Shown one piece after another: positions 4,007-62,026 of a DNA stretch of 64,000 nt. The position numbers were made by a program, and so were the translations under genes. The notes under the pieces are model-generated. The model saw only the letters and a program-made list of their open reading frames with translations. It was not told where the DNA came from and did no database searches. How positions within the stretch are numbered: position 1 is the stretch's first letter; every line of letters begins with the position of its first letter. The stretch lies in the sequence record MK308675.1; one strand, given 5' to 3'.

Positions 4007-4636
4007 TTAGCCGATTAGCTCATTATACTGCGACGTTGGGTCGAGTAGTGAATCTTTAAGGAAGTGAGTGACAGTGTTGTAGGTATGGGCTACCGCTATC
4101 TTGTCGTTAAACGTAGGAGCGTAATCCATTTCCGCTGCTTCTACTGTGGTACGAGAAACAAGAATTTCGTTATCATCCTCATCGTACTCTTCCATCAGAA
4201 TACCGTTGGTGATTGTACGGTACTCGAAGCTACGGCCGAATGCTAGCGTTGGGGATGGGTTCACGTAAGCACCATCATAACCGTCAATGCGACCTTCGCG
4301 ATAAAGCTTGTTCAGCGCAGGATGTGCCATTACATAATGACGCATGCCTTCCGGACAGTGCTGTAGGTCTTCCATTGTTTCTAAGCGACAGATATCTGCC
4401 TCTTGCTTAAAGTGTTGGTTAACCATACCGCGAACTTGGTTAATGCGACGAGCGAACTCACCTGTTGTGAATTCTTGGTAACGCTGCTGTACTCGCTCTG
4501 CGATAGAAGCAGCATAACCTTGCGTCGATTGCACGAAGTTATGTACGTTCTCACGGATTTTATTTTGGAGTGCTTGCGATGGTCTGCCGAACAGACTTTG
4601 CATAGCTACGTCAGTATCCGCATAAATAGTTTGCAT
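4007..4636 (-). CDS. conserved phiKZ-like hypothetical protein
   Basis: 209 aa with GGGAG RBS, bounded by hairpins; MAHPAL...GRIDGY motif. Confidence 0.6.
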   Translation of the reverse strand: MQTIYADTDVAMQSLFGRPSQALQNKIRENVHNFVQSTQGYAASIAERVQQRYQEFTTGEFARRINQVRGMVNQHFKQEADICRLETMEDLQHCPEGMRHYVMAHPALNKLYREGRIDGYDGAYVNPSPTLAFGRSFEYRTITNGILMEEYDEDDNEILVSRTTVEAAEMDYAPTFNDKIAVAHTYNTVTHFLKDSLLDPTSQYNELIG

Positions 4637-4759
4637 TGTATTTTCTCCCGTCTTACTCAGACTATAAGGTGGTTCAGTTAAAAGCCACCCTTTAGTAAGG
4701 CGACGTATGTTAAAGTTCGCAAAGGTTATATAGGTCAGACTTTCGCCTGACCTATGTGC

Positions 4760-5935
4760 TTACTTTTTCTTTTTCTTAGACTTTGGAGCAGGGTGGTAAC
4801 TATCGACTATCTTCCGGAACTGGCTTATCTGGGCGTCACTCACCACATAGACGGGATGAATGCCTTTTACAGGTACGCGCATTTTCTTGAGATAGTCTAA
4901 GTCTTCCAGGAGTTCATCTGCGACGCCAATGTCATTACTTAGCTCATAGATGGCCTGGGAGAAAGCAGGTAGGTCTAAGTCCACCTCCAATTCTTCCACT
5001 AGGTCATGAATGGATTCGCAGTATTCCGGCTTAAGCGGGCGACCGTCCTCATCTGTGGTCACATAATGGTAAGGTCCCGTGGCGAAGCCTCCGACAAAAG
5101 TCTCGCCGCGCCAGACACAGATGCGGCCATCCGAAATGGTTTCGGTAAGGTCATCGTTGCCTAAACTTAGTTCCAACAAAGGGGACTGTATTAGCTTCTT
5201 AGATGCAGGGGCACCTATACCTTCGAACATCTTATTGATGAGGCTTTCCATATGGTTAACCTTTTCTAAGATTGCCGAATTGTCGTAGACTGTCTGTAGC
5301 TTAGGCCGGTGTAAGTCAGGCCTCTCCACATCTTCGTCCTTTTTAAAGGCGAAGTCACAAAGATTCCAATCGCCTCTAGGAGCCGATAGTTCTAACCTAC
5401 GATAGTCGCGCTGTTCTTCATAAGGTTTAGAGCGAGCAATGAGTTCCTGCACATTTACCGTATGCAACTCATGTGTTGGCACATGATAGTGAACCCCTGC
5501 CAATTGCCCATCTTCACTGACGAAGATAAGTTCTCGAGACTGGACGTCATAAACTCGACCCGTGTTGGCGCTTACGGCTAGGTTAGGGTACCCTGCAACA
5601 GCAACCGACTGAATCTCTTTATTCTTGTCGAACGGGTCAGGGAAAGATAAACCAGGTAGCTCCACGAAGTCCCTGTAGATGAACGACACATTGCCGGCAT
5701 CCACCGGGACGAAGTCTAGCTGTTGTGGCCGGATAATGAAACGACCGTAGTTATCAAAGTAGAAAACCTTTAGCCACTCTGGCGTGATGGTAATCTTCAA
5801 TGGGGCCACAGTGTAGCCTTTGATTTCCAGTTCAAATGGTAACGGTACTGATTTACCATGGAGACAATCATAGAGCTCGTATTCGTCGGCCGAATAGCGA
5901 TTGTCCGTAAACGGAATAACTTTAGGCAGGCACAT
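4760..5935 (-). CDS. degenerate NUMOD4/HNH-family-like protein without an HNH catalytic motif
   Basis: The segment FPDPFDKNKEIQSVAVAGYPNLAVSANTGRVYD aligns by eye to the intron HNH segment FTKPLPLRKNPNYFRIPGCTKYGLSKEGLLLN. The basic tail is KSKKKK. Confidence 0.5.
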   Translation of the reverse strand: MCLPKVIPFTDNRYSADEYELYDCLHGKSVPLPFELEIKGYTVAPLKITITPEWLKVFYFDNYGRFIIRPQQLDFVPVDAGNVSFIYRDFVELPGLSFPDPFDKNKEIQSVAVAGYPNLAVSANTGRVYDVQSRELIFVSEDGQLAGVHYHVPTHELHTVNVQELIARSKPYEEQRDYRRLELSAPRGDWNLCDFAFKKDEDVERPDLHRPKLQTVYDNSAILEKVNHMESLINKMFEGIGAPASKKLIQSPLLELSLGNDDLTETISDGRICVWRGETFVGGFATGPYHYVTTDEDGRPLKPEYCESIHDLVEELEVDLDLPAFSQAIYELSNDIGVADELLEDLDYLKKMRVPVKGIHPVYVVSDAQISQFRKIVDSYHPAPKSKKKKK

Positions 5936-6389
5936 CTTTATACCTCTTAAAACTGTTGTGAAAGTAAATGTTATCAGGGACCTCTATAAAAGAAGTAAAG
6001 CCCTTCCATAACTCCAAAGGGGAATAACCATTGAGTCCATGACCGTCCGCTTTCTGGACGACAATGAACATTTTATCCGGATGTTCTCTAGCGCACTCGT
6101 AGAGCTCGACTATGTTCTCGCGGATTTGGTCCAAGCCCACTGAGCAAGGACCTTCTGTGGGATAGCGTATCTCTCTACCATCCGGTAGCTTCTCTACGAA
6201 GCCAGCTTTGAGGTTCTTGGTTACCAAGGCGTAGGTCTGACCCATAAGTCCCCGGCCTACTCCGTACTTGGCTCCATACCTTAAGGCTAACTTCGCAGCT
6301 CCCAAGCCATGGCGCCCCTCGGGGTTTGAACCGTAGACGAAGACCATGTTCGGTTTCAGTTTGGTAATGGTACCGTTCCACCATTTCAT
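5922..6389 (-). CDS. A1S_2505-family (macro-domain-like) phage protein
   Basis: VFVYGSNPEGRHGLGAA and GRGLMGQTYALVTK match the family consensus. Confidence 0.75.
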   Translation of the reverse strand: MKWWNGTITKLKPNMVFVYGSNPEGRHGLGAAKLALRYGAKYGVGRGLMGQTYALVTKNLKAGFVEKLPDGREIRYPTEGPCSVGLDQIRENIVELYECAREHPDKMFIVVQKADGHGLNGYSPLELWKGFTSFIEVPDNIYFHNSFKRYKDVPA

Positions 6390-6398
6390 GGACCCTCC

Positions 6399-6932
6399 TT
6401 ATTTGCGCTTAATGAGACCTTTCTCTTCTAACACCTTAAAGAACTTCTTCTGGTTATCGTTGGCTTCGCGGTTAGGGGAAGTGCCGATATAGCTATAGTA
6501 AGGATGCGGACATACCGTGCGTCCTGTACTGAAGAAGCGGCGCATCTCTTTTTCAATCTCCTGGTGGTTATTGTTCTTGACATGCATCATTGTTCCGCGA
6601 TAACCGGCGAGTTTAAGATGGCGATTAAACAAAGTCCACGCTACGTAAGTCGGAGCTCCATTGGCCATTTGGTTAAGGGTTTTACGGTTGACCGGCGTCT
6701 TATAGTCAACCATGTTGCGCATGCGTACTTGAAGAGGCTTACCTGTGGTCATGTGTAAAATAAGGCCTTTCAAAATCTTATCTTGGAGTTCTTCACTATA
6801 ATGTTGGCGCTTGACTAGCTCAATCATTCGATGATAGTATGCGACGTCCTTATTGTAGATATAATCTGCATAAGGGGTTGGGTTTACTTTATCGTGGTTT
6901 GACTTAGGCATTGTTCTGTCCTCTATGTTCAA
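6399..6932 (-). CDS. hypothetical basic protein
   Basis: 177-aa ORF with RBS, co-oriented with its neighbours. Confidence 0.55.
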   Translation of the reverse strand: MNIEDRTMPKSNHDKVNPTPYADYIYNKDVAYYHRMIELVKRQHYSEELQDKILKGLILHMTTGKPLQVRMRNMVDYKTPVNRKTLNQMANGAPTYVAWTLFNRHLKLAGYRGTMMHVKNNNHQEIEKEMRRFFSTGRTVCPHPYYSYIGTSPNREANDNQKKFFKVLEEKGLIKRK

Positions 6933-10085: not shown

Positions 10086-10274
10086 TTATTGCAGTGTAAC
10101 TTGCTCTGCCGCACACCAAGCATATTGGTTTGCAACTGTAACAGCAGGCATCTTGATGTTGTTCTTAATAGAACCAGGGTTTTGCGTAGAGTGAATATCG
10201 TACTGAGGCTCCAACATACTGAAGCGCTCTGCCATGTATTCGTCTAGTGCTAACGACCCCGTCATCATATCTCC
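10086..10274 (-). CDS. nvRNAP beta' N-terminal subunit, exon 2 (phiKZ gp56.1-like)
   Basis: Begins GGA GAT ATG ATG (G-D-M-M), which completes NADFD+GD; 62 aa. Confidence 0.9.
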   Translation of the reverse strand, partial: GDMMTGSLALDEYMAERFSMLEPQYDIHSTQNPGSIKNNIKMPAVTVANQYAWCAAEQVTLQ

Positions 10275-12096
10275 CGTACCTTCAGCCAGTTCGTTAGACT
10301 GACCCGCAGCATGACCTGCTAAGCTCTAGGGTTTCCCACTAGACGACTCACCTTCGTGAGAAGGGCATTTGACTGCCGTCGAGACTATATCATCGGTTCC
10401 TCTCAAGGACACCGCCTCATGCTTCGCCCGCACTTGCTGGGCTAGCGCTAACTTATTCCGCTATTAGGATAGCATCTGTTAGCATTAGTCGTTGAACCTG
10501 CCACAGTTTAAAGTAGCTCGGCTGCTGATTACCAATTCCATGTTCCCTTAGGAGTGTCATCGCGACAGGTCCATAGGACATCTCTTATGTTCTTTCTGTT
10601 TTCACAGCCTTTCCATCTGAACTTTCGTTCTCTGTTTCGGCCATAAGAGCTTTACGGATTTCCAGCAATTCAAAAGGTTTTACTTCGACTTAGATTTCCA
10701 GCTTCTCAATCTTTTTATGTTAATGTTAAAGCGCCCAAGCAAAGGGACGTTTTTCTTTTCAGCGTTTCTTATTGTAGACTCAGCTATGCCTATTTGCTTA
10801 GCAACTTGCTGTATGGAAGTGCCTACGTAGATTTCTTTAGTTAAGGGGTCCTCTACAGTAACGATGGCCGAAATGCGACTAGCGTCCTTCAGGATAGCGC
10901 CTTCCGCTTCTGTAAAGTCTGGCCATTCAGGTTTGTCCAAAACGGGACGAACCACGTAGCCTCGGCACGGGACATCGTCGAAGGTACTCTTCATCCTGGA
11001 AACATTCGACTCCACTGTCCCTATGTATCTGGCAGCTGCTCCGGAACTTTCAAAGATTTTTACTTCTCCGAAACTTTCCGGGCGATAGCTTTTTACCATA
11101 CAGGACGCGCACATACCAGAGCGACCAACCTGTTTTTCTAGCTCCGACGCCACCGGTACCGGCAATCCGCTGTCTTCATAGGAAAAAGCATATGTGCCCT
11201 TTTCATTTAGCTGATAGACGGCTTCTTCTGCGGCTCTTCTAGAAAGGCGGTCCACGCTATTGAAGTGCATGCCTGTGGCTTTAGCGGCCACCGTAGAGGA
11301 ACTATATATTTCCTGAGTGTTTTCTCTAACGTCAAAAACACAAACTCTTCTACCCTTCCCTTTTCTTGAGATGTTCTTTTCTTTCCCGGCGTTCTTGCTC
11401 TGAGTAAGCCATTGAAGGTTACTGAGCCCATCATTAAAGCCATCAGTATCCTTATGGTCACACTCTAAAACATCCACGTTAGCCGGATAGTCTTTAAAAG
11501 CCAGTAGTTTCGCTCTGCCTCTCCCAAGTAACAGATGTCGCCCCAAGTCGTCTAAAATACTGGCCTTCATATAACGACCATGTATGCTAAATGAATGGGT
11601 CTTTCCGGTTGCTCCATTCAGCAATAGACCTTCTTTAGACAGTCCGTATTTCGTACAGCCTGGAATCCTAAAGTAATTTGGATTTTTTCTAAGCGGCAGG
11701 GGTTTGGTAAACCCATACGTTAGATTACCTGGATGTAGATTATTACGGTCACCGTCTATGAACAATGGGCGTATTTTTCTTACTTCTTCCAGAGAAAAAG
11801 CGAAGAGTTTCTTCCATGCCCAGACCATAACTTTAGCGATGGCCACTTCCACACGGCCATTATCGCTTTTTAAGAATACGCTTTTGTTTCTTCCATTGAC
11901 TTTGCGGACACATTTTGCTTCCGTTCCGTCACTAGAATAAACATTACCCTTTTTGTCTAGCCAGAGACCATAGTTTGGAATCTCGACTCGACTAACATTA
12001 ACATAACCACTTAAACGTTCTCTTTTCATAGCTTATCTCCTCTATGATATCCGTTTTTATGGTTTATTTTGATTTAAAAAACTTACCCTTCTTTTA
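10275..12096 (-). mobile_element. group I self-splicing intron (1822 nt) in nvRNAP beta' with a homing endonuclease ORF
   Basis: The 5' exon ends in U (TTCGAT), the intron starts TAA and ends in G. Core elements on the minus strand: P AATTGCTGGAAA (10659-10670), Q AATCAGCAG (10522-10530), R GTTCAACGACTA (10486-10497), S GATATAGTC (10383-10391). Confidence 0.93.
10680..12029 (-). CDS. intron-encoded HNH homing endonuclease with NUMOD4- and NUMOD1-like modules
   Basis: Intact motif CDHKDTDGFNDGLSNLQWLTQSKN; a degenerate first copy (FIDGDRNNLHPGNL); GAGGAG RBS inside the intron. Confidence 0.9.
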   Translation of the reverse strand: MKRERLSGYVNVSRVEIPNYGLWLDKKGNVYSSDGTEAKCVRKVNGRNKSVFLKSDNGRVEVAIAKVMVWAWKKLFAFSLEEVRKIRPLFIDGDRNNLHPGNLTYGFTKPLPLRKNPNYFRIPGCTKYGLSKEGLLLNGATGKTHSFSIHGRYMKASILDDLGRHLLLGRGRAKLLAFKDYPANVDVLECDHKDTDGFNDGLSNLQWLTQSKNAGKEKNISRKGKGRRVCVFDVRENTQEIYSSSTVAAKATGMHFNSVDRLSRRAAEEAVYQLNEKGTYAFSYEDSGLPVPVASELEKQVGRSGMCASCMVKSYRPESFGEVKIFESSGAAARYIGTVESNVSRMKSTFDDVPCRGYVVRPVLDKPEWPDFTEAEGAILKDASRISAIVTVEDPLTKEIYVGTSIQQVAKQIGIAESTIRNAEKKNVPLLGRFNINIKRLRSWKSKSK

Positions 12097-13434
12097 ATCG
12101 AAATCTGCGTTAGGTCCCACCAGTGCAAGGACCGAGAGTGCTATCTCGCATTCGCTTAGGCCCACGATTCTTAATCCTTGCGTGCTAGACCTTGCAAGAC
12201 TAGGATAACGAGTCAGAGCACACTTAATGCCGCCGCCCTTACGCTTACGTGTACGCAACGTAGAAGGCAGTTCTTTAAGTGTAGGGTTACCAGCCGCATC
12301 TTTTACTACGATGGTCTGAGCAACGCTCTCAGGAGTCGGAGGAGTATCATCGATAAGTTCTTCCAGGACATCTACAAGTAGAGGGTCCCAATCCGTAGCA
12401 TGTTGTAGTACGTAGGCTTGGGCCTGAGCGTGACTAAACTTATGTTTCCGGATGAGCTTAGCGATGACTAATGGTTCCAGACAAGTTAACATCTGATGGT
12501 ACGGTACGAGAATAGTATCGTACTCATGAGGACGATGATAAGACGTGATGATGTTACGGAACGAGTAGTTCATGCGCGTACCGAAGTTCACACGGCGTAA
12601 CCAACCAGACTTAGACGATAAGTTGTTTTCGATAACGTCTTTATAGTAGTTGGTTAAGTCTACCATGATGTTAGTAAAGCGAGTCTCTAATCGCTTCACG
12701 TTTATCATGCCCATTGTGCCGGCTGCGGCAAAGATAGCTTCCATTGCAGAAGCCATTGTCTTATCGTAGTAGTTACCGTAAGCTGTTGACTCGATGGCAA
12801 ATGCTACTTTAGACGGGATTGGAATGTGCTTAACGAATAGATGCTCACGGTACTCTTCCACAAACTCTTTCAGTTCTTGGCGTTTCTGCACGGAGGCAGT
12901 CTGGCGTAAAGCAACTTCTAGAATCTTGTCGAACTCTTCTTTTACATTAGAGAGGCCACGTTTAAGACCTAGCTTCTTGAAGTGCTCTACAATAGAGGTA
13001 CCTTTCTTCTTAGACTCATCTGGGTCAGGCAGCTTAGGGTCCATTGCCCACTGCAAGCCATCGAAGCCACGGTTATCCTTTAAGCGTTCGCTTAGGAAAA
13101 TCCAAGGCAGTGGTGCTAAGAAGTAATCGATGCCGCGAGGAACAGAAATCCAGATTTCCGATTCGATTGCTTGGTTGTGGTGAGATACCACTTTGGTGTT
13201 ACAGTGTTCACAGATAACACCGAGGTTAACTGCTTCTTTTGTCTTACGACAACCACACTGAGGCACAGTAGCTAAAACATCCGAAGACTCATACTTAGTC
13301 ACCGTCAATGACTCAAGTAGCTTTCGGTCTTCTTCGGTTTCAAGTTTCAGTTCGTTTACGATGACCGGAGGGTTTTCCATTGAAGATAAACGCCAGTCCA
13401 AGTTACCGAATTTTAGAACCTGTGTTCCTAACAT
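12097..13434 (-). CDS. nvRNAP beta' N-terminal subunit, exon 1 (phiKZ gp55-like)
   Basis: Zn-binding CGC...CEHC, GWLRRVNFGTRMNYSFR and TRYPSL; ends GPNADFD. The spliced product would be 508 aa. Confidence 0.92.
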
Positions 13435-13462: not shown

Positions 13463-14233
13463 TTACTGTTCGTACTTAGTGTTTTGGCTTACGTCGCCAA
13501 CTTCACTCTTAGGGGGAATATAGGACAAACCGTTCTTTGAAACGTACTCCGTAATCTCCTCAAGAGTGTCGAACTTCTTACCACCCAGGTGCTTAGGGAT
13601 AATCTCCATAAACTCCACTAGGGCTCTTTGGTCCGCTACGGCAGCACCTACGTCATCTAACGCGAAATGTGTTGACTGGGTGCGACTGAGGCGGTTAGGT
13701 AGGATTTTAGAAGGATACATCATCGTACGAGTAGACGAGGTATCCGCTACCTGGTGGCCTAGGATTAAACCTAAGCGAGGCATCTGCGCATTGATGAAAG
13801 ACTTATCGAAGTTCACGGACTTCCCGTGGACGATAATGACGTACTTCGCTTTGGCGTCATAAGCCGGTAGTTTACCGTCAACTAGGAACTCTCGATGGTT
13901 CGCAGTAAAGTAGCTAGTTAAGATAAAAATGATGCGGTCTTCTACTTCGTGAAGAGGTAGCCGCTCGCGTGTCTCCCATTCTACGTCAAAGCCGTTTTCA
14001 ATATGGAACTGCACAGTGCCTTCGTCAGAACGCGCCATTTCTTCAGCTGTAGGCTGAACCATATAGTCGAAGCTGACCTGTTCTTCTAAGTCTTCCGATA
14101 GAATTGTTCCTGCCACTTGGACTAGTGGGTAATGATTACAGCCAGCAACATAAGTGCCGTCCTCTAGCTTAACTGGGTAGTTGAAACCCATTGTCTCTGA
14201 ATCCAGGGACAGATATACGATGGTCTTTGCCAT
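13463..14233 (-). CDS. DEDDh 3'-5' exonuclease (oligoribonuclease/RNase T-like)
   Basis: ExoI LDSETMG, ExoII GKSVNFDKSFI and ExoIII HFALDD motifs. Confidence 0.8.
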   Translation of the reverse strand: MAKTIVYLSLDSETMGFNYPVKLEDGTYVAGCNHYPLVQVAGTILSEDLEEQVSFDYMVQPTAEEMARSDEGTVQFHIENGFDVEWETRERLPLHEVEDRIIFILTSYFTANHREFLVDGKLPAYDAKAKYVIIVHGKSVNFDKSFINAQMPRLGLILGHQVADTSSTRTMMYPSKILPNRLSRTQSTHFALDDVGAAVADQRALVEFMEIIPKHLGGKKFDTLEEITEYVSKNGLSYIPPKSEVGDVSQNTKYEQ

Positions 14234-14332: not shown

Positions 14333-16237
14333 TTAAGAAGTCACACCGTAACGGTATTGAGAACGACCTGCTTGGTATGCACCTTCACCGTATACACCAC
14401 GTTGTGATGTTGCAGTTTGGAATGCTTGACCAGGCTGGAACGCTTGACCAGCGTTGAAGCCGTGTACGCCTTGAGTGTTGTCGTAGTCAGTGTCAACCAG
14501 ACCTTCAGTGTTTAGAACCATGCCGCTGTTGATAACTGCTTGCATGAACGCTGGAAGGAAATCTGGAGAGTAGAAGAAACGGTCGTAGATACCGTCAATG
14601 TCTGCATTAACTACTTGCTTAAGGATTTCACGACGAGTGTGGATGTTCACAAGACCTTGTGGACCATTACAGCCGCCAGGTACTAGAGACTGCTGGAACT
14701 CACGCATGCGAGTGCCTGCTTCTGCACCGAACAGTTGTAGCATCTGTAGCTGACCACATTCACGTAGGTCGTGAGTGTTACCTTCTTTATCTGTGTAAGT
14801 ACCAGCATGAACAGCAACAGCTTGAGGCTGTAGTACTGGACGTGCTTCGTTACCCCAGATTGGAAGGAAGTGTCCGCCTAGGAATTGGTCTACTAGAGCT
14901 ACGAATTCTGCGTTTGCTTGTAGACGGTCTTGGTCATCACCTAGAACCGATGCAACTAGAAGTTCGTAAATCCATGCAGTACGACCACCACGCAGTACGT
15001 CGAATGCCACAGTGATTGTGTCATGTACGTTACGTGCAATGTACTGGTCAAGTGATACGCGGCCAGTTGTGTCCATACCCATAGATACAGATTTGTCTAG
15101 CTCAATTTCACATGGTGCCCAATCTTCAGCGCCAGTCATACGACCGTCCCACTGATAGTTAAGAACGCCTAGTGAAGGTTTGCCACCAAAGTTACGACGG
15201 AAGACCTGCTTGTAGTTCTGGCCAGACGCTTGCTGTGCAAGTGCTAGTAGGCTGAACAGTACAGTTTCTTCAGACTCGTATGCTTTAGCAGTGTGTGGGT
15301 CAATACCTTGAGCCACTGATTGAACTAGTAGAGGGTGGTACGCACGACGTACGAATTCACCGTTTTCTAGACGCACTGCATCGTTAGATGGAGCGAATAC
15401 GAAATCTACGTAAGTTTCAGCTTGGGCTAGAGTGATACGACGCTCACGGTTGTTACGAGAACGTTTAGCGTTACCGCGACGAGTACGTGCTTCACCAACA
15501 GTTACTGTAGAAGTAATGTCAGTGTAAGTTGGGTTACCTTCTACGTCAGATGTAGTTGAACCTGGGTTCACTTCATGACCGATTTCGATAGTAAGACCAC
15601 GGCTCACGATGTCTGGTGCGCTTACGGTAATGTTGCTGTTTAGAGACATTAGGTTACGTTCAGCTGTTGCGTATAGACAGCCTAGGTAAGCTTCATTCGT
15701 TAGGTCCATTGATGCACGAGCAGTCATGAAGCCGTTTTGAATGTAGTCTACAGTAGCACCGGTACGACGTACAACTTCGTCTGTGATAGCGTTAACAAGA
15801 ACGGCATCCCAGAACTCTGAAGTATCTGCGTCAAGAAGGATTGGTTGGTTTTCAACGATGATTTCTTCGCCTTTAACCGCGCCTTCATATGCACCTTCTT
15901 CGATTAGGATGGTGTAGAAACCTTTAGTCTCACCTACAGTGTTGTAGGCTACGATTGCAGGTACACCTACCTTCATGTCATCGTCGATTGCGATGAACTG
16001 AAGACCTAGTGCGTTGCGAGAAGCTTTCTTCTCAGTAGCAGCACGCTCATTAAGGAACGCTATGCCAGCTGTGATAGCTTCGTTGGTGCGACCAGTGAAG
16101 TCAGAAGCAGAGCCTAGAACTTGGTCTAGGAAGTTGCCGCCCATCGGTGCAGACTGTTGTGCAGCTGCGCCTTGCTCAGGTGCGTTAGTTTCAGTTTGTG
16201 CTTCTTTCTTAGCTTTGTTACCTTTAGGGTCGAACAT
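14333..16237 (-). CDS. chmA: chimallin, the major phage nuclear shell protein (phiKZ gp54-like)
   Basis: 634 aa with disordered Q/A-rich N-terminus and aromatic/Gly C-tail; strongly biased codons; own promoter and terminator; lies between the gp52-like gene and nvRNAP beta'. Confidence 0.85.
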   Translation of the reverse strand: MFDPKGNKAKKEAQTETNAPEQGAAAQQSAPMGGNFLDQVLGSASDFTGRTNEAITAGIAFLNERAATEKKASRNALGLQFIAIDDDMKVGVPAIVAYNTVGETKGFYTILIEEGAYEGAVKGEEIIVENQPILLDADTSEFWDAVLVNAITDEVVRRTGATVDYIQNGFMTARASMDLTNEAYLGCLYATAERNLMSLNSNITVSAPDIVSRGLTIEIGHEVNPGSTTSDVEGNPTYTDITSTVTVGEARTRRGNAKRSRNNRERRITLAQAETYVDFVFAPSNDAVRLENGEFVRRAYHPLLVQSVAQGIDPHTAKAYESEETVLFSLLALAQQASGQNYKQVFRRNFGGKPSLGVLNYQWDGRMTGAEDWAPCEIELDKSVSMGMDTTGRVSLDQYIARNVHDTITVAFDVLRGGRTAWIYELLVASVLGDDQDRLQANAEFVALVDQFLGGHFLPIWGNEARPVLQPQAVAVHAGTYTDKEGNTHDLRECGQLQMLQLFGAEAGTRMREFQQSLVPGGCNGPQGLVNIHTRREILKQVVNADIDGIYDRFFYSPDFLPAFMQAVINSGMVLNTEGLVDTDYDNTQGVHGFNAGQAFQPGQAFQTATSQRGVYGEGAYQAGRSQYRYGVTS

Positions 16238-61756: not shown

Positions 61757-62026
61757 TTATGCAGCTTTTGCACAATCGTCAAAGAAGTAAATCGGTTTAG
61801 CCATAATGCGTGCTTTAGCGTGAGCTGAAGTGTAAACATCTTTAAGGCGAGCTGGTGCAAAGAAAACTTCTTCCCATAGACGTGGATTGAAGTAAAGCAC
61901 AAGTAAAGCGATTGGTGAAACGACAGAAAGGATTGCCGATAGGAAAGCAAGCACTTCTAGTACAAAGCTGCCAACGTAGTAAAGTGGACGGTTAGCAAGT
62001 ACAATGTTTTTAGTTTTAGCGAACAT
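61757..62026 (-). CDS. early membrane protein
   Basis: MFAKTKNIVLANR start followed by a TM segment. Confidence 0.6.
   Translation of the reverse strand: MFAKTKNIVLANRPLYYVGSFVLEVLAFLSAILSVVSPIALLVLYFNPRLWEEVFFAPARLKDVYTSAHAKARIMAKPIYFFDDCAKAA

What the first reader, a model, noticed from the sequence alone, without database searches (positions are those of the whole stretch)
10275..12096. Group I intron inserted exactly inside the RNAP catalytic motif NADFD|GD
Seen: exon 1 ends ...AAC GCA GAT TTC GAT then TAA, and exon 2 starts GGA GAT ATG. The U at -1, terminal G and P/Q/R/S core elements are canonical, and the HNH ORF precedes the core. Without splicing the Mg-binding DFDGD motif is broken, so the intron is hard to lose. 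Established: phiKZ has a gp55/gp56 HNH/gp56.1 split, and a PhiPA3 intron endonuclease was reported to cut the nvRNAP gene of co-infecting phages. Inference: this enzyme may target intron-less beta' alleles of competing phages.
Basis: partly seen in the sequence, partly recalled or inferred. Interest (0 to 1): 0.7.

Follow-up and report, generated by a model that had tools for sequence, protein, structure and literature searches.

The report
Self-splicing intron in phage RNA polymerase
A self-splicing RNA element that carries its own DNA-nicking enzyme interrupts the catalytic centre of a giant Vibrio phage's RNA polymerase gene; such elements are already known in related phages, so this is a new, so far unannotated example, not a new kind.

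Summary

- **Host gene:** its non-virion RNA polymerase beta'-N gene (phiKZ gp55 orthologue) ends ...AAC GCA GAT TTC GAT at 12097.
- **Intron:** a 1,822-nt group I intron follows (12096-10275). Exon 2 resumes GGA GAT ATG at 10274.
- **Evidence for the intron:** Rfam finds the core. A guide sequence pairs 8/8 with the exon end, giving U.G at the splice site, and the last intron base is G. Intron-less relatives and a PHROG profile run straight through the junction (positions 420|421).
- **Intron ORF:** the 449-aa ORF is an I-HmuI-type HNH endonuclease. It lies in the P1 loop, and its stop codon overlaps the guide sequence.
phiKZ is split in the same motif, but 12 nt upstream. PhiPA3 gp210 cuts the virion RNAP beta gene, not the nvRNAP gene.
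- **Competition idea:** plausible but untested.
- **Wider context:** related phages and metagenome contigs use at least five insertion sites within 18 nt of this motif. One contig appears to hold two introns separated by a 3-nt exon.

Verdict: a real feature and a new member of a known kind.

The parts
12097..13434 (-). Exon 1 of the nvRNAP beta'-N gene (446 codons), ending ...PNADFD
   Evidence: ORF list. PHROG 2987 'RNA polymerase beta subunit', E 1.6e-91, profile positions 5-420. tblastn finds 281 phage records, mostly annotated RNAP beta/beta'. Only one copy per Yong genome.
12097..12104 (-). 5' strand of P1 (exon AUUUCGAU); the 5' splice site follows U12097
   Evidence: Pairs 8/8 with GUCGAAGU at 10689-10682, with U12097.G10689 as the wobble pair.
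10275..12096 (-). Group I intron, 1,822 nt
   Evidence: Rfam RF00028 at 53.8 bits, exon contiguity, helix covariation with related introns.
12030..12096 (-). A/U-rich intron leader: in-frame stop UAA as the first intron codon (12096-12094) and a Shine-Dalgarno GAGGAG (12042-12037) 7 nt before the ORF start
   Evidence: Read directly from the sequence.
10680..12029 (-). Intron ORF, 449 aa: I-HmuI-type HNH endonuclease with an N-terminal degenerate HNH-like module, an HNH motif (DHKD..N..NL.W.T...N, H192/N213), NUMOD1 and a C-terminal HTH. It occupies the P1 loop.
   Evidence: Pfam NUMOD1 26.4 bits (cut-off 22.8), HNH_3 19.3 bits (below cut-off). PHROG HNH families, 8e-8 and 2e-7. BLASTP to phiKZ gp56, 2e-9. 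The family profile hits I-HmuI 1U3E at E 1.2e-20. hhalign of the N-terminal module against the HNH region: 80%, E 1.3e-5.
10682..10689 (-). Internal guide sequence GUCGAAGU (3' strand of P1). It overlaps the last two sense codons and the first base of the ORF's stop codon (TAA 10682-10680).
   Evidence: It lies 4 nt 5' of P3; in the five compared introns the 6-nt guide lies 3-6 nt 5' of P3. Only 0.2% of random 13-nt windows give such a match.
10672..10677 (-). P3 5' strand CCUUUU
   Evidence: Pairs with AUGAGG 10420-10415 (5 of 6, one UxU). The position is homologous and covaries in six introns.
10662..10667 (-). P4 5' strand UGCUGG (element P)
10529..10661 (-). P5 and a long P5 extension with GAAA-capped hairpins
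   Evidence: Rfam alignment. The MFE fold recovers the CUCUUAUG/CAUAAGAG stem and the GNRA hairpins.
10523..10528 (-). P4 3' strand UCAGCA (element Q)
10496..10522 (-). P6/P6a hairpin
   Evidence: Rfam alignment and MFE fold.
10486..10495 (-). J6/7 UCAAC and P7 5' strand GACUA (element R)
10421..10483 (-). Two hairpins between P7 and P3' (P7.1/P7.2-like, as in subgroup IA introns)
   Evidence: MFE fold. Positional correspondence with phiKZ, PA7 and 2050HW. The subgroup assignment is my inference.
10415..10420 (-). P3 3' strand AUGAGG
10395..10413 (-). P8 hairpin GGUGUCCU-UGAG-AGGAACC
   Evidence: The three outer pairs covary.
10383..10394 (-). J8/7 GAUGAUA and P7 3' strand UAGUC (element S)
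10275..10382 (-). P9 region with several hairpins, ending in the terminal G at 10275. The last ~40 nt resemble the 3' tail of the phiKZ intron.
10086..10274 (-). Exon 2 (62 codons, GDMMTGSLALDE..., plus stop). GenBank annotates only a 60-aa (59 codons + stop) 'hypothetical protein' from the second of the two adjacent Met codons.
   Evidence: PHROG 2987 positions 421-475.

Best explanation
[quoted passage not shown] Shown by sequence: the insertion lies between the second Asp and the Gly codon of the Mg-binding motif NADFD|GD. The ribozyme core, the guide sequence, U at -1 and the terminal G are all present. Joining the exons restores a 508-codon reading frame colinear with intron-less homologues.

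Inferred mechanism:
1. The pre-mRNA folds so that the exon end AUUUCGAU pairs with GUCGAAGU 1.4 kb downstream. This forms P1, with the whole endonuclease ORF in its loop.
2. An external guanosine cleaves after U12097.
3. The freed exon attacks after G10275, and the ligated mRNA encodes the intact catalytic motif.
4. Unspliced RNA can only give a 446-aa product lacking the third Asp, because the intron begins with an in-frame UAA.
5. The 449-aa ORF has its own Shine-Dalgarno site and encodes an I-HmuI-type HNH enzyme with NUMOD1/HTH DNA-binding modules. It most likely nicks the uninterrupted NADFDGD-coding site of an intron-less allele in a co-infecting relative.
6. Repair from the intron-bearing genome then copies the intron in (homing). 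If the genomes are too divergent to recombine, the nick simply damages the competitor.

Because the ORF's last codons are the guide sequence, translation of the ORF and formation of P1 cannot occur on the same RNA molecule at the same time. In a nucleus-forming phage, splicing presumably occurs inside the ribosome-free phage nucleus before export (inference).
For: - **Identity of the genome:** 100% match to four Yong phage genomes. The chimallin gene lies two genes upstream (phrog_4795, 1e-31).
- **Ribozyme:** Rfam RF00028 at 53.8 bits, E 7e-11. The core folds better than shuffles, z = -2.15.
- **Exact junction:** sequence. PHROG 2987 positions 5-420 and 421-475. sm033, BONAISHI and PhiPA3 are continuous through NADFDGD. 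So are 42 of 44 IMG/VR loci and 44 of the 52 metagenome loci that reach the motif.
- **P1:** 8/8 pairs ending in U.G, just 5' of P3 as in five related introns (4 nt here; the 6-nt guides there lie 3-6 nt away). The chance for such a window is 0.2%.
- **Helix covariation:** in six introns of this gene, 99.4% of cells are paired against 30-50% when partners are slid. 13 of 26 pairs change on both sides, all in P1, P3 and P8.
- **Homologous case:** phiKZ gp55 is split in the same motif and is purified as a 56-kDa protein, larger than its 420-codon first ORF (PMC4666361).
- **Endonuclease:**
- **Necessity of splicing:** only one beta'-N copy per Yong genome, and the phage is a propagated isolate.
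- **Mobility of such introns at this motif:** in the Moabitevirus group there are HEG-carrying, HEG-less and empty alleles among 84-99% identical genomes.
Against: - There are no RNA or protein data for this phage.
- The Rfam score is only 3.8 bits above the gathering threshold. Rfam's own alignment misplaces P3', because the model lacks P7.1/P7.2.
- My P3 has one UxU mismatch.
- P1 is long-range (1.4-kb loop). A second 8-nt exon complement exists at 11987-11980 inside the ORF, and such a match somewhere in 1.8 kb is expected by chance in 41% of shuffles.
- The block alignment behind the covariation count was fitted by hand to the structure.
- For the phiKZ homologue, one long-read transcriptome study saw no spliced reads (bioRxiv 10.1101/2023.10.13.562163).
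- The endonuclease is an orphan: only itself was found among 5.8 billion proteins. Its HNH_3 Pfam score is below the cut-off, and its predicted structure is unusable (mean pLDDT 51).
- All four Yong isolates carry the intron and no intron-less close relative is known, so homing of this particular element is not documented.
Confidence: 0.9

Rival explanations
1. The intron is also a weapon. Its endonuclease nicks the intron-less beta' gene of co-infecting, related Vibrio jumbo phages and lowers their yield, giving Yong an advantage (interference competition, as for PhiPA3 gp210). It adds to the best explanation rather than replacing it.
For: - There is a precedent in the same virus family: PhiPA3 gp210, an intron-encoded HNH nickase in an RNAP gene, reduces phiKZ fitness (PMC11620839; review PMC12908238).
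- The Yong ORF is intact, with catalytic His and Asn conserved.
- The target motif is conserved at first and second codon positions in all relatives.
Against: - The precedent concerns a different gene (vRNAP beta).
- There, the enzyme had to be artificially imported into the competitor's nucleus or act in hybrid nuclei.
- No co-infecting competitor of Yong is known.
- The closest intron-less relative (sm033) shares only 37 of 60 bases around the site.
- Several relatives already occupy neighbouring sites in the motif, which would break the target.
Confidence: 0.25
2. The element is an immobile relic. The ribozyme still splices, because it must, but the endonuclease no longer has a usable target or activity. 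The element persists only because imprecise loss would destroy the catalytic motif.
For: - The ORF has no close relative anywhere.
- All four Yong genomes are identical here.
- Decay of the endonuclease gene is seen in relatives: an in-frame stop in pir03 and ORF-less introns in 2050HW, L054 and L102.
- The HNH_3 score is below the Pfam cut-off.
Against: - The 449-codon frame is open.
- It has a good Shine-Dalgarno site, conserved HNH catalytic residues and NUMOD1 above the cut-off.
- A decaying gene of 1.35 kb would be expected to carry stops, as pir03's does.
Confidence: 0.2
3. There is no splicing. The gene is genuinely split into two polypeptides (446 aa and about 60 aa) with a free-standing HNH gene between them, as GenBank annotates it. 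These polymerases are already built from split subunits.
For: - The GenBank record lists three separate 'hypothetical protein' CDS.
- Jumbo-phage RNAPs are naturally fragmented (PMC4666361).
Against: - The split would leave NADFD on one chain, and the annotated second CDS starts after GD, losing the third catalytic Asp.
- A complete group I core with a matching guide sequence, U at -1 and a terminal G lies exactly between the pieces.
- The frame is restored to the base.
- No start codon or ribosome-binding site precedes GGAGAT.
- The phiKZ protein runs at the spliced size.
Confidence: 0.03

Closest known systems
phiKZ gp55 / gp56 (HNH) / gp56.1 group I intron in the nvRNAP beta'-N gene
   Same: It is in the orthologous gene and the same NADFDGD motif, with the same layout: in-frame stop soon after the 5' splice site, HNH ORF in the P1 loop, guide sequence right after the ORF, then the core. 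P4 and P7 sequences are identical and the 3' tail is similar.
   Different: The insertion site is 12 nt upstream (AAU|GCU, N|A), with its own guide sequence GUUGGG. The ORFs share only 27% identity over 148 aa. gp56 (334 aa) lacks the N-terminal module of the Yong ORF. Peripheral helices differ.
PhiPA3 gp210 intron (Birkholz et al. 2024, Science; PMC11620839)
   Same: A group I intron with an HNH nicking endonuclease, inserted next to conserved Asp residues of a chimallivirus RNAP gene. It is the experimental precedent for homing and for interference competition.
   Different: It sits in a different gene (the beta subunit of the virion RNAP, PhiPA3 gp211/209, target phiKZ gp178) and a different motif. 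Its activity is demonstrated, whereas nothing is demonstrated for Yong.
Escherichia phage Goslar gp206 with the annotated Intron_gpI between two vRNAP beta pieces
   Same: It is the closest detectable relative of the Yong ORF (25% identity over about 285 aa), including the N-terminal degenerate HNH-like module. It has the same ORF-then-core layout.
I-HmuI (SPO1 DNA polymerase intron; PDB 1U3E)
   Same: It is the structural prototype of the endonuclease family. The profile of the Yong, PA7, Goslar and phiKZ ORFs matches it end to end (E 1.2e-20). It is a nicking HNH enzyme encoded in a phage group I intron.
   Different: I-HmuI is 174 aa, and the Yong protein is 449 aa with an extra N-terminal module and extra C-terminal DNA-binding repeats. 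The host gene and target differ.
Other introns in the same motif: pir03 and C-ZP2022 (NAD|FDGD), Serratia phages 2050HW and Totoro (NCDFDG|D), Pseudomonas phage PA7 (NADFDGD|Q), metagenome contigs L054, L098 and L102 (NADFD|GD)
   Same: They are group I introns in the orthologous gene within 18 nt of each other. Each of the five introns compared in detail (phiKZ, PA7, 2050HW, Totoro, L054) has a guide sequence complementary to its own exon end. L098 and L102 use exactly the Yong site and the same guide GUCGAAGU, and also begin with UAA.
   Different: The sites differ, except in L054, L098 and L102. The ORF may lie before the core, after it, or be absent. The L098 and L102 cores are not recognised by Rfam. 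None of their ORFs is closely related to Yong's.

Membership tests
Group I self-splicing intron (Rfam RF00028) | Conserved catalytic core (P3-P9 with the P4-P6 and P3-P7-P8 domains; P/Q/R/S elements) | tested here: met
   Rfam 53.8 bits against a gathering score of 50, E 7e-11. P4 and P7 strands are identical to those of five related introns. P3 and P8 covary.
Group I self-splicing intron (Rfam RF00028) | P1: the exon end pairs with an internal guide sequence, with a U.G wobble at the 5' splice site | tested here: met
   AUUUCGAU (12104-12097) pairs with GUCGAAGU (10689-10682), 8/8, with U12097.G10689. The position is homologous to the guide in related introns. P1 covaries with the different exon contexts of phiKZ, PA7, 2050HW, Totoro and L054.
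Group I self-splicing intron (Rfam RF00028) | Terminal guanosine at the 3' splice site | tested here: met
   G10275 immediately precedes GGAGAT.
Group I self-splicing intron (Rfam RF00028) | Removal restores a functional host reading frame | tested here: met
   446 + 62 codons. PHROG 2987 positions 420|421. Colinear with sm033 (502 aa), BONAISHI (497 aa) and PhiPA3 gp054 (488 aa). The pieces were searched separately; no joined protein was given to any tool.
Group I self-splicing intron (Rfam RF00028) | P10 pairing between the guide region and the start of exon 2 | tested here: inconclusive
   Only AGAU (exon 2 positions +3 to +6) against AUCU (10695-10692), with a 2-nt offset. This is 4 bp and not distinguishable from chance (read).
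Group I self-splicing intron (Rfam RF00028) | GTP-dependent self-splicing | not testable with these tools
   Needs in-vitro transcription and splicing, or RT-PCR.
HNH homing endonuclease of the I-HmuI type | HNH (beta-beta-alpha-metal) motif with the general-base His and the metal-binding Asn | tested here: met
   D191-H192-K-D194...N199...N204-L-x-W...N213 aligns with the motif of phiKZ gp56, the PA7 ORF, Goslar gp206 and I-HmuI. PHROG HNH families score 8e-8. Pfam HNH_3 alone is below its cut-off (19.3 against 24.8).
HNH homing endonuclease of the I-HmuI type | C-terminal sequence-reading DNA-binding modules (NUMOD / helix-turn-helix) | tested here: met
   NUMOD1 26.4 bits against a cut-off of 22.8, plus a weak HTH_23 hit. 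The family profile covers I-HmuI residues 3-171 of 174.
HNH homing endonuclease of the I-HmuI type | Encoded in a peripheral loop of a self-splicing intron, with its own translation signals | tested here: met
   The ORF lies between the 5' splice site and the guide sequence (P1 loop). GAGGAG lies 7 nt before the ATG. The frame differs from exon 1.
HNH homing endonuclease of the I-HmuI type | Site-specific nicking of the intron-less allele | not testable with these tools
   Needs purified protein and a plasmid carrying the joined-exon site.
HNH homing endonuclease of the I-HmuI type | Presence/absence polymorphism among close relatives (evidence of homing) | tested here: inconclusive
   All four Yong genomes carry the intron. 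No closer relative was found in the phage, IMG/VR or metagenome collections. Polymorphism is seen for the neighbouring site in the Moabitevirus group.
Chimallivirus nvRNAP beta'-N subunit (phiKZ gp55 orthologue) | Homology to gp55-type proteins, including the zinc-binding Cys pairs and NADFDGD | tested here: met
   PHROG 2987, E 1.6e-91. Alignment with phiKZ gp055 and PhiPA3 gp054; C60, C62, C75, C78 and PNxDFD are invariant.
Chimallivirus nvRNAP beta'-N subunit (phiKZ gp55 orthologue) | Conserved neighbourhood next to the nuclear-shell (chimallin) gene | tested here: met
   Chimallin lies at 14333-16237(-) (phrog_4795, 1e-31). The shell gene precedes beta'-N in sm033, PhiPA3, phiKZ and Moabite. 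Yong has one extra 256-aa ORF between them.
Intron endonuclease used for interference competition (PhiPA3 gp210 type) | The enzyme cuts the homologous gene of a co-infecting phage and lowers its yield | not testable with these tools
   Only an analogy. Target conservation is limited to first and second codon positions.

The most novel reading that the evidence does not exclude
The 21-nt stretch that encodes NADFDGD in the chimallivirus nvRNAP beta' gene is a contested landing pad for homing introns. At least five different insertion points are in use: N|A, D|F, D|G, G|D and D|x. In the five introns compared in detail, the guide sequence is retuned to its own exon end. The endonuclease gene may sit before the core, after it, or be lost. 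In one environmental phage lineage two introns sit side by side, separated by a 3-nt exon that is the third Asp codon. On this reading each resident intron both breaks the target of its rivals' endonucleases (immunity) and attacks unoccupied alleles. The Yong intron would then be one move in an arms race between mobile introns that shapes which jumbo phages can co-infect. The pattern of sites is shown here. The arms-race interpretation is inference.
Probability: 0.35. Interest if true: 0.65.

Novelty: new member of a known kind. Interest (0 to 1): 0.4.

Why it matters
For this genome, it corrects the annotation. Three 'hypothetical proteins' are really one essential RNA polymerase subunit plus a mobile intron and its endonuclease, and the phage's middle and late transcription depends on RNA splicing.

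More broadly, mobile introns in jumbo-phage polymerase genes were recently shown to decide the outcome of phage-phage competition. A catalogue of which sites are occupied in which phages predicts which pairs could exclude each other. That is relevant when jumbo phages are combined in cocktails, and for understanding speciation of nucleus-forming phages.

The clustering of five sites in 18 nt, and the apparent 3-nt exon, also offer a natural test set for two questions: how group I ribozymes retarget their guide sequences, and how two ribozymes splice around a micro-exon.

Tried and rejected
- **Rfam's P3' placement.** In Rfam's own alignment, P3' falls at AACAGAUGCU with two mismatches. Comparison with phiKZ, PA7, 2050HW and L054 shows P3' is AUGAGG, just before P8, with two extra hairpins in between. 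I used the comparative model.
- **Structure of the ORF.** AlphaFold on a 5-sequence alignment gave mean pLDDT 51 and pTM 0.29. That is too poor for a fold search, so none was run.
- **Relatives of the ORF.** The search of 5.8 billion proteins returned only the query itself. The IMG/VR scan found no relative. PDB by single sequence gave only chance hits. A 4-sequence profile was needed to reach I-HmuI.
- **Close relatives of exon 1.** None were found in metagenome contigs. The alignment-based scan found only distant ones.
- **DNA search with the core.** It found only short conserved P4-P7 segments in Staphylococcus and Lactococcus phage introns, so there is no close intron relative in GenBank phages.
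- **A second NADFDGD-coding site in the window** (possible self-target). Only a 3-mismatch, chance-level match was found, inside the chimallin gene.
- **Further introns in the window.** None were found even at E <= 1.
- **Base composition.** The G+C content of the intron does not differ from its flanks. Only the strand skew differs.
- **Guide-sequence uniqueness.** Complementarity alone is not significant over 1.8 kb: 41% of shuffles give a match, and a second match exists at 11987. Only the position gives it weight.
- **Intein or protein splicing.** Not pursued. The insert has its own frame, stop codon and ribosome-binding site, and a ribozyme core.
Full report
**Where the feature is.** The window matches four Vibrio mediterranei jumbo phage genomes (vB_VmeM-Yong XC31, XC32, MS31, MS32) at 100% identity; window position 1 is about position 62001 of MK308674.1. 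Every CDS in this part of the record is annotated 'hypothetical protein'. The 634-aa ORF at 14333-16237(-) is the nuclear shell protein, chimallin (phrog_4795, E 1e-31). The phage is therefore a nucleus-forming chimallivirus. The finding lies on the minus strand.

**Check of the observation.** On the minus strand the ORF 13434..12097 ends ...GGA CCT AAC GCA GAT TTC GAT, followed by TAA at 12096-12094. At 10274 the sequence GGA GAT ATG ATG ACG... begins and stays open to the stop at 10088-10086. Rfam's group I intron model matches 10756..10362(-) at 53.8 bits (gathering score 50, E 7e-11). It is the only significant Rfam match in the window, even at E <= 1. A 449-aa ORF (12029..10680) lies between the 5' end of the insert and the ribozyme core.

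**The two flanks are one gene.**
- Exon 1 matches PHROG 2987 ('RNA polymerase beta subunit') at E 1.6e-91 over profile positions 5-420. The 62-aa exon 2 matches positions 421-475 of the same profile.
- tblastn with exon 1 finds 281 phage records. Most listed hits are annotated RNAP beta or beta' subunits of jumbo phages, and there is a single place per Yong genome.
- In a protein alignment, Vibrio phages sm033 (502 aa) and BONAISHI (497 aa) and Pseudomonas phage PhiPA3 gp054 (488 aa) run without interruption through ...PNADFDGD.... Yong exon 1 ends at NADFD and exon 2 starts at GD.
- Joined, the frame is 446 + 62 = 508 codons. I searched the two pieces separately throughout and handed no joined protein to any tool.
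- phiKZ gp55 is the N-terminal beta' fragment of the non-virion RNAP (PMC4666361). The chimallin gene lies next to it in phiKZ, PhiPA3, sm033 and Moabite. Yong has the same neighbourhood, with one extra ORF.

**Anatomy of the intron.** The last eight exon bases, AUUUCGAU (12104-12097), pair 8/8 with GUCGAAGU at 10689-10682, and the splice-site U12097 pairs with G10689.
- Complementarity alone is weak evidence. 41% of shuffled introns contain such an 8-mer somewhere, and a second one exists at 11987-11980.
- The position is what counts. The guide lies 4 nt 5' of P3; in the five related introns of this gene the 6-nt guide lies 3-6 nt 5' of P3. Only 0.2% of random 13-nt windows give such a match.

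The endonuclease ORF thus occupies a 1.4-kb P1 loop, and its last codons (AAG UCG AAG UAA) are the guide sequence. Downstream follow:
- P3 (10677-10672, paired with 10420-10415)
- P4 (10667-10662, paired with 10528-10523)
- a long P5 extension with GAAA-capped hairpins
- P6
- J6/7 and P7 (GACUA 10490-10486, paired with UAGUC 10387-10383)
- two hairpins between P7 and P3', as in subgroup IA introns (my inference)
- P8 (10413-10395)
- a P9 region ending in G10275

Rfam's alignment misplaces P3' because its model lacks the two extra hairpins. The comparative placement has one UxU mismatch. The 426-nt ribozyme part folds better than shuffles (z = -2.15). P10 is weak (4 bp with an offset) and I treat it as undecided.

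**Covariation.** I cut fixed blocks (exon end, guide, P3, P4, P7, outer P8) from six introns of this gene: Yong, phiKZ, PA7, 2050HW, Totoro and metagenome L054. I then counted pairs.
- 99.4% of cells form standard pairs, against 30-50% when the 3' partners are slid by 1-3 columns.
- 13 of 26 pairs change on both sides, all of them in P1, P3 and P8. P4 and P7 are invariant.
- No shuffle of 500 reached the observed values on four of the five measures; one did on the fifth.

The caveat is that I chose the blocks by position and complementarity, so the alignment leans towards the structure. The P1 result is the most telling: the exon ends differ because the insertion sites differ, and each guide follows its own exon.

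**The intron ORF.**
- Pfam gives NUMOD1 above its cut-off, and HNH_3 and an HTH below theirs. PHROGs gives several HNH endonuclease families (8e-8, 2e-7).
- BLASTP aligns the HNH region with phiKZ gp56 (27% identity, E 2e-9).
- The best phage relatives are Goslar gp206 and the intron ORF of PA7-like phages. Goslar gp206 lies between two vRNAP beta pieces and is followed by an annotated group I intron.
- A profile of the four ORFs matches I-HmuI (PDB 1U3E) from residue 3 to 171 of 174 at E 1.2e-20.
- The catalytic His (H192) and Asn (N213) are conserved.
- Residues about 60-105 form a second, degenerate copy of the HNH region in which the His is replaced by Phe (LFIDGDRNNLHPGNL). hhalign gives 80% probability and E 1.3e-5. 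PA7 and Goslar gp206 share it.
- The ORF has GAGGAG 7 nt before its ATG and is in a different frame from exon 1.
- It has no close relative in 5.8 billion proteins, and its AlphaFold model is unusable.

**Mechanism.** Shown: the insertion point, the ribozyme elements, the restored frame and the endonuclease family. Inferred from established group I intron and I-HmuI biology: guanosine-initiated two-step splicing, and nicking of the uninterrupted site followed by recombinational copying of the intron.
- Splicing must occur. The genome has one beta'-N gene, and without splicing the product stops after NADFD and lacks the third Asp.
- The homologous phiKZ protein is isolated at 56 kDa, the spliced size. 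One long-read study, however, saw no spliced phiKZ reads.
- Because the guide sequence is part of the ORF, a ribosome finishing the ORF would unwind P1. In chimalliviruses transcription is separated from translation by the phage nucleus (PMC12908238), so splicing before export would avoid this conflict. This last point is my inference.

phiKZ does carry gp55 / gp56 HNH / gp56.1. Its intron (Rfam 75.6 bits) is inserted at AAU|GCU, between N and A, 12 nt upstream of the Yong site, with guide GUUGGG pairing to CCUAAU. PhiPA3 gp210 nicks phiKZ gp178, a beta subunit of the virion RNAP, next to a DD motif. It does not cut the nvRNAP gene. The competition idea therefore rests on an analogy in another gene. 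The predicted Yong homing site is conserved among relatives only at first and second codon positions (37 of 60 bases in sm033, 28-40 of 60 overall).

**Wider survey.** Of 44 beta'-N loci from IMG/VR, 42 are continuous through NADFDGD. Of the 52 metagenome loci whose match reaches the motif, 44 are continuous. The broken ones, together with GenBank phages, define five insertion points within 18 nt:
- **N|A:** phiKZ.
- **D|F:** Vibrio phages pir03 and C-ZP2022. They have C rather than U at -1. Rfam gives 54.7 and 43.6 bits. The pir03 HNH ORF carries an in-frame stop.
- **D|G:** Yong and the metagenome contigs L054, L098 and L102. L098 and L102 start with UAA and use the same guide GUCGAAGU, but their cores are not recognised by Rfam.
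- **G|D:** Serratia phages 2050HW (no ORF) and Totoro (HNH ORF after the core), L097, and the first intron of L093 and L094.
- **D|x, after NADFDGD:** PA7 (ORF after the core), the second intron of L093 and L094, and probably L056 and L108.

In the Moabitevirus group, Totoro is about 84% identical to 2050HW over this region, and the other relatives are about 99% identical. The group shows all three states: an intron with endonuclease gene, an intron without one, and an empty site. The empty Moabite allele differs from 2050HW by a cluster of synonymous changes around the site. The scans required PN[AC]DF to be intact, so the first two sites are under-sampled. I found no paper that links NADFDGD with introns.

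**Two introns and a 3-nt exon.** In L093 (contig ODJR01000016.1, 240 kb) and the closely similar L094 (contig OECT01000007.1, 239 kb), Rfam finds two tandem cores (41.5-44.6 bits, E about 1e-7). In L093:
- Intron A (4225-6104) has P1 GAUGGU/GCUAUC and a 490-aa ORF in the P1 loop.
- GAU follows at 6105-6107.
- Intron B follows at 6108-6436. Its guide GUCCCCAU pairs 7/8 with AUGGUGAU, a sequence that exists only after intron A has been removed.
- Exon 2 (ELNF...) starts at 6437.

This reading rests on sequence alone.

**Verdict.** The feature is real, precisely delimited and functionally important for the phage, but it belongs to a known kind. Group I introns with HNH genes in jumbo-phage RNAP genes have been known since the phiKZ genome was sequenced, and one was characterised in 2024. 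What is new is this unannotated instance and its site. The broader picture of a crowded insertion hot spot in the catalytic motif also appears new; I found no paper describing it in the searchable library.

Noticed in passing
L006 (phiKZ), L110/L111 (pir03, C-ZP2022), window 10275-12096, L042/L052 (2050HW, Totoro), L027 (PA7): Five different group I intron insertion points lie within 18 nt of the NADFDGD-coding stretch of the orthologous nvRNAP beta' gene: N|A, D|F, D|G, G|D and D|x. All fall at codon boundaries. Each of the five introns compared in detail (phiKZ, PA7, 2050HW, Totoro, L054) has a guide sequence matching its own exon end.
   Followed up: yes
L093 4225-6436 (contig ODJR01000016.1) and L094 (contig OECT01000007.1): Two tandem group I introns appear to be separated by a 3-nt exon, GAU (L093 6105-6107), which is the third Asp codon of the motif. 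The guide of the second intron pairs best with the exon sequence that exists only after the first intron is removed, which suggests ordered splicing.
   Followed up: partly
L052 (Totoro), L042 (2050HW), L053 (Moabite): All three states of a homing cycle occur in one phage group. Totoro has an intron with an HNH gene, 2050HW has the same intron without an ORF, and Moabite has an empty site. Moabite is about 99% identical to 2050HW and Totoro about 84%. The empty allele differs from 2050HW by a cluster of synonymous changes around the site, like a co-conversion tract or a resistant target.
   Followed up: partly
L110 about 3802/3803 (pir03), L094 about 4224/4225, L054 about 1244/1245: Some splice sites are non-canonical. 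pir03 and L094 have C at -1, paired C-G with the guide. L054 pairs its U at -1 with A rather than G. I could not tell whether these introns splice efficiently.
   Followed up: no
window 11715-11850 (ORF residues about 60-105), minus strand: The endonuclease has an N-terminal degenerate duplicate of the HNH region that lacks the catalytic His (LFIDGDRNNLHPGNL). The PA7 intron ORF and Goslar gp206 share it, and phiKZ gp56 lacks it (hhalign 80%, E 1.3e-5).
   Followed up: partly
window 11980-11987, minus strand: A second 8-nt stretch (GUCGAGAU) inside the ORF can also pair 8/8 with the exon end. It is expected by chance, but it could form an alternative P1-like pairing about 110 nt from the 5' splice site.
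   Followed up: partly
window 10086-13434 = MK308674.1 72086-75434: GenBank annotates exon 1, the endonuclease and a 60-aa (59 codons + stop) fragment of exon 2 (starting at the second of two adjacent Met codons, after GD) as three separate hypothetical proteins. The intron and the full 508-codon gene are not annotated.
   Followed up: yes
L110 3833-4732 (pir03): The pir03 intron HNH ORF is interrupted by one in-frame stop and is annotated as several small ORFs. It is either a decaying endonuclease gene or a sequencing error. It shows no detectable similarity to the Yong ORF, although the two introns share the same ORF-then-core layout.
   Followed up: partly
window 13463-14233, minus strand: A 256-aa ORF sits between the chimallin gene and beta'-N. 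The relatives sm033, BONAISHI, PhiPA3 and Moabite have no gene there. It has no PHROG hit. Its N-terminus (SLDSET) looks like a DEDD-type exonuclease motif, from my own reading only.
   Followed up: no
L098 4219-5200 and L102 4000-about 4281: Two metagenome introns occupy exactly the Yong site, begin with UAA and have the same guide plus J1/3 (GUCGAAGUAAAA). Their core (AAUUAAGCGRGAAC...) is not detected by Rfam at E <= 0.01, so it may be a different group I subtype.
   Followed up: partly
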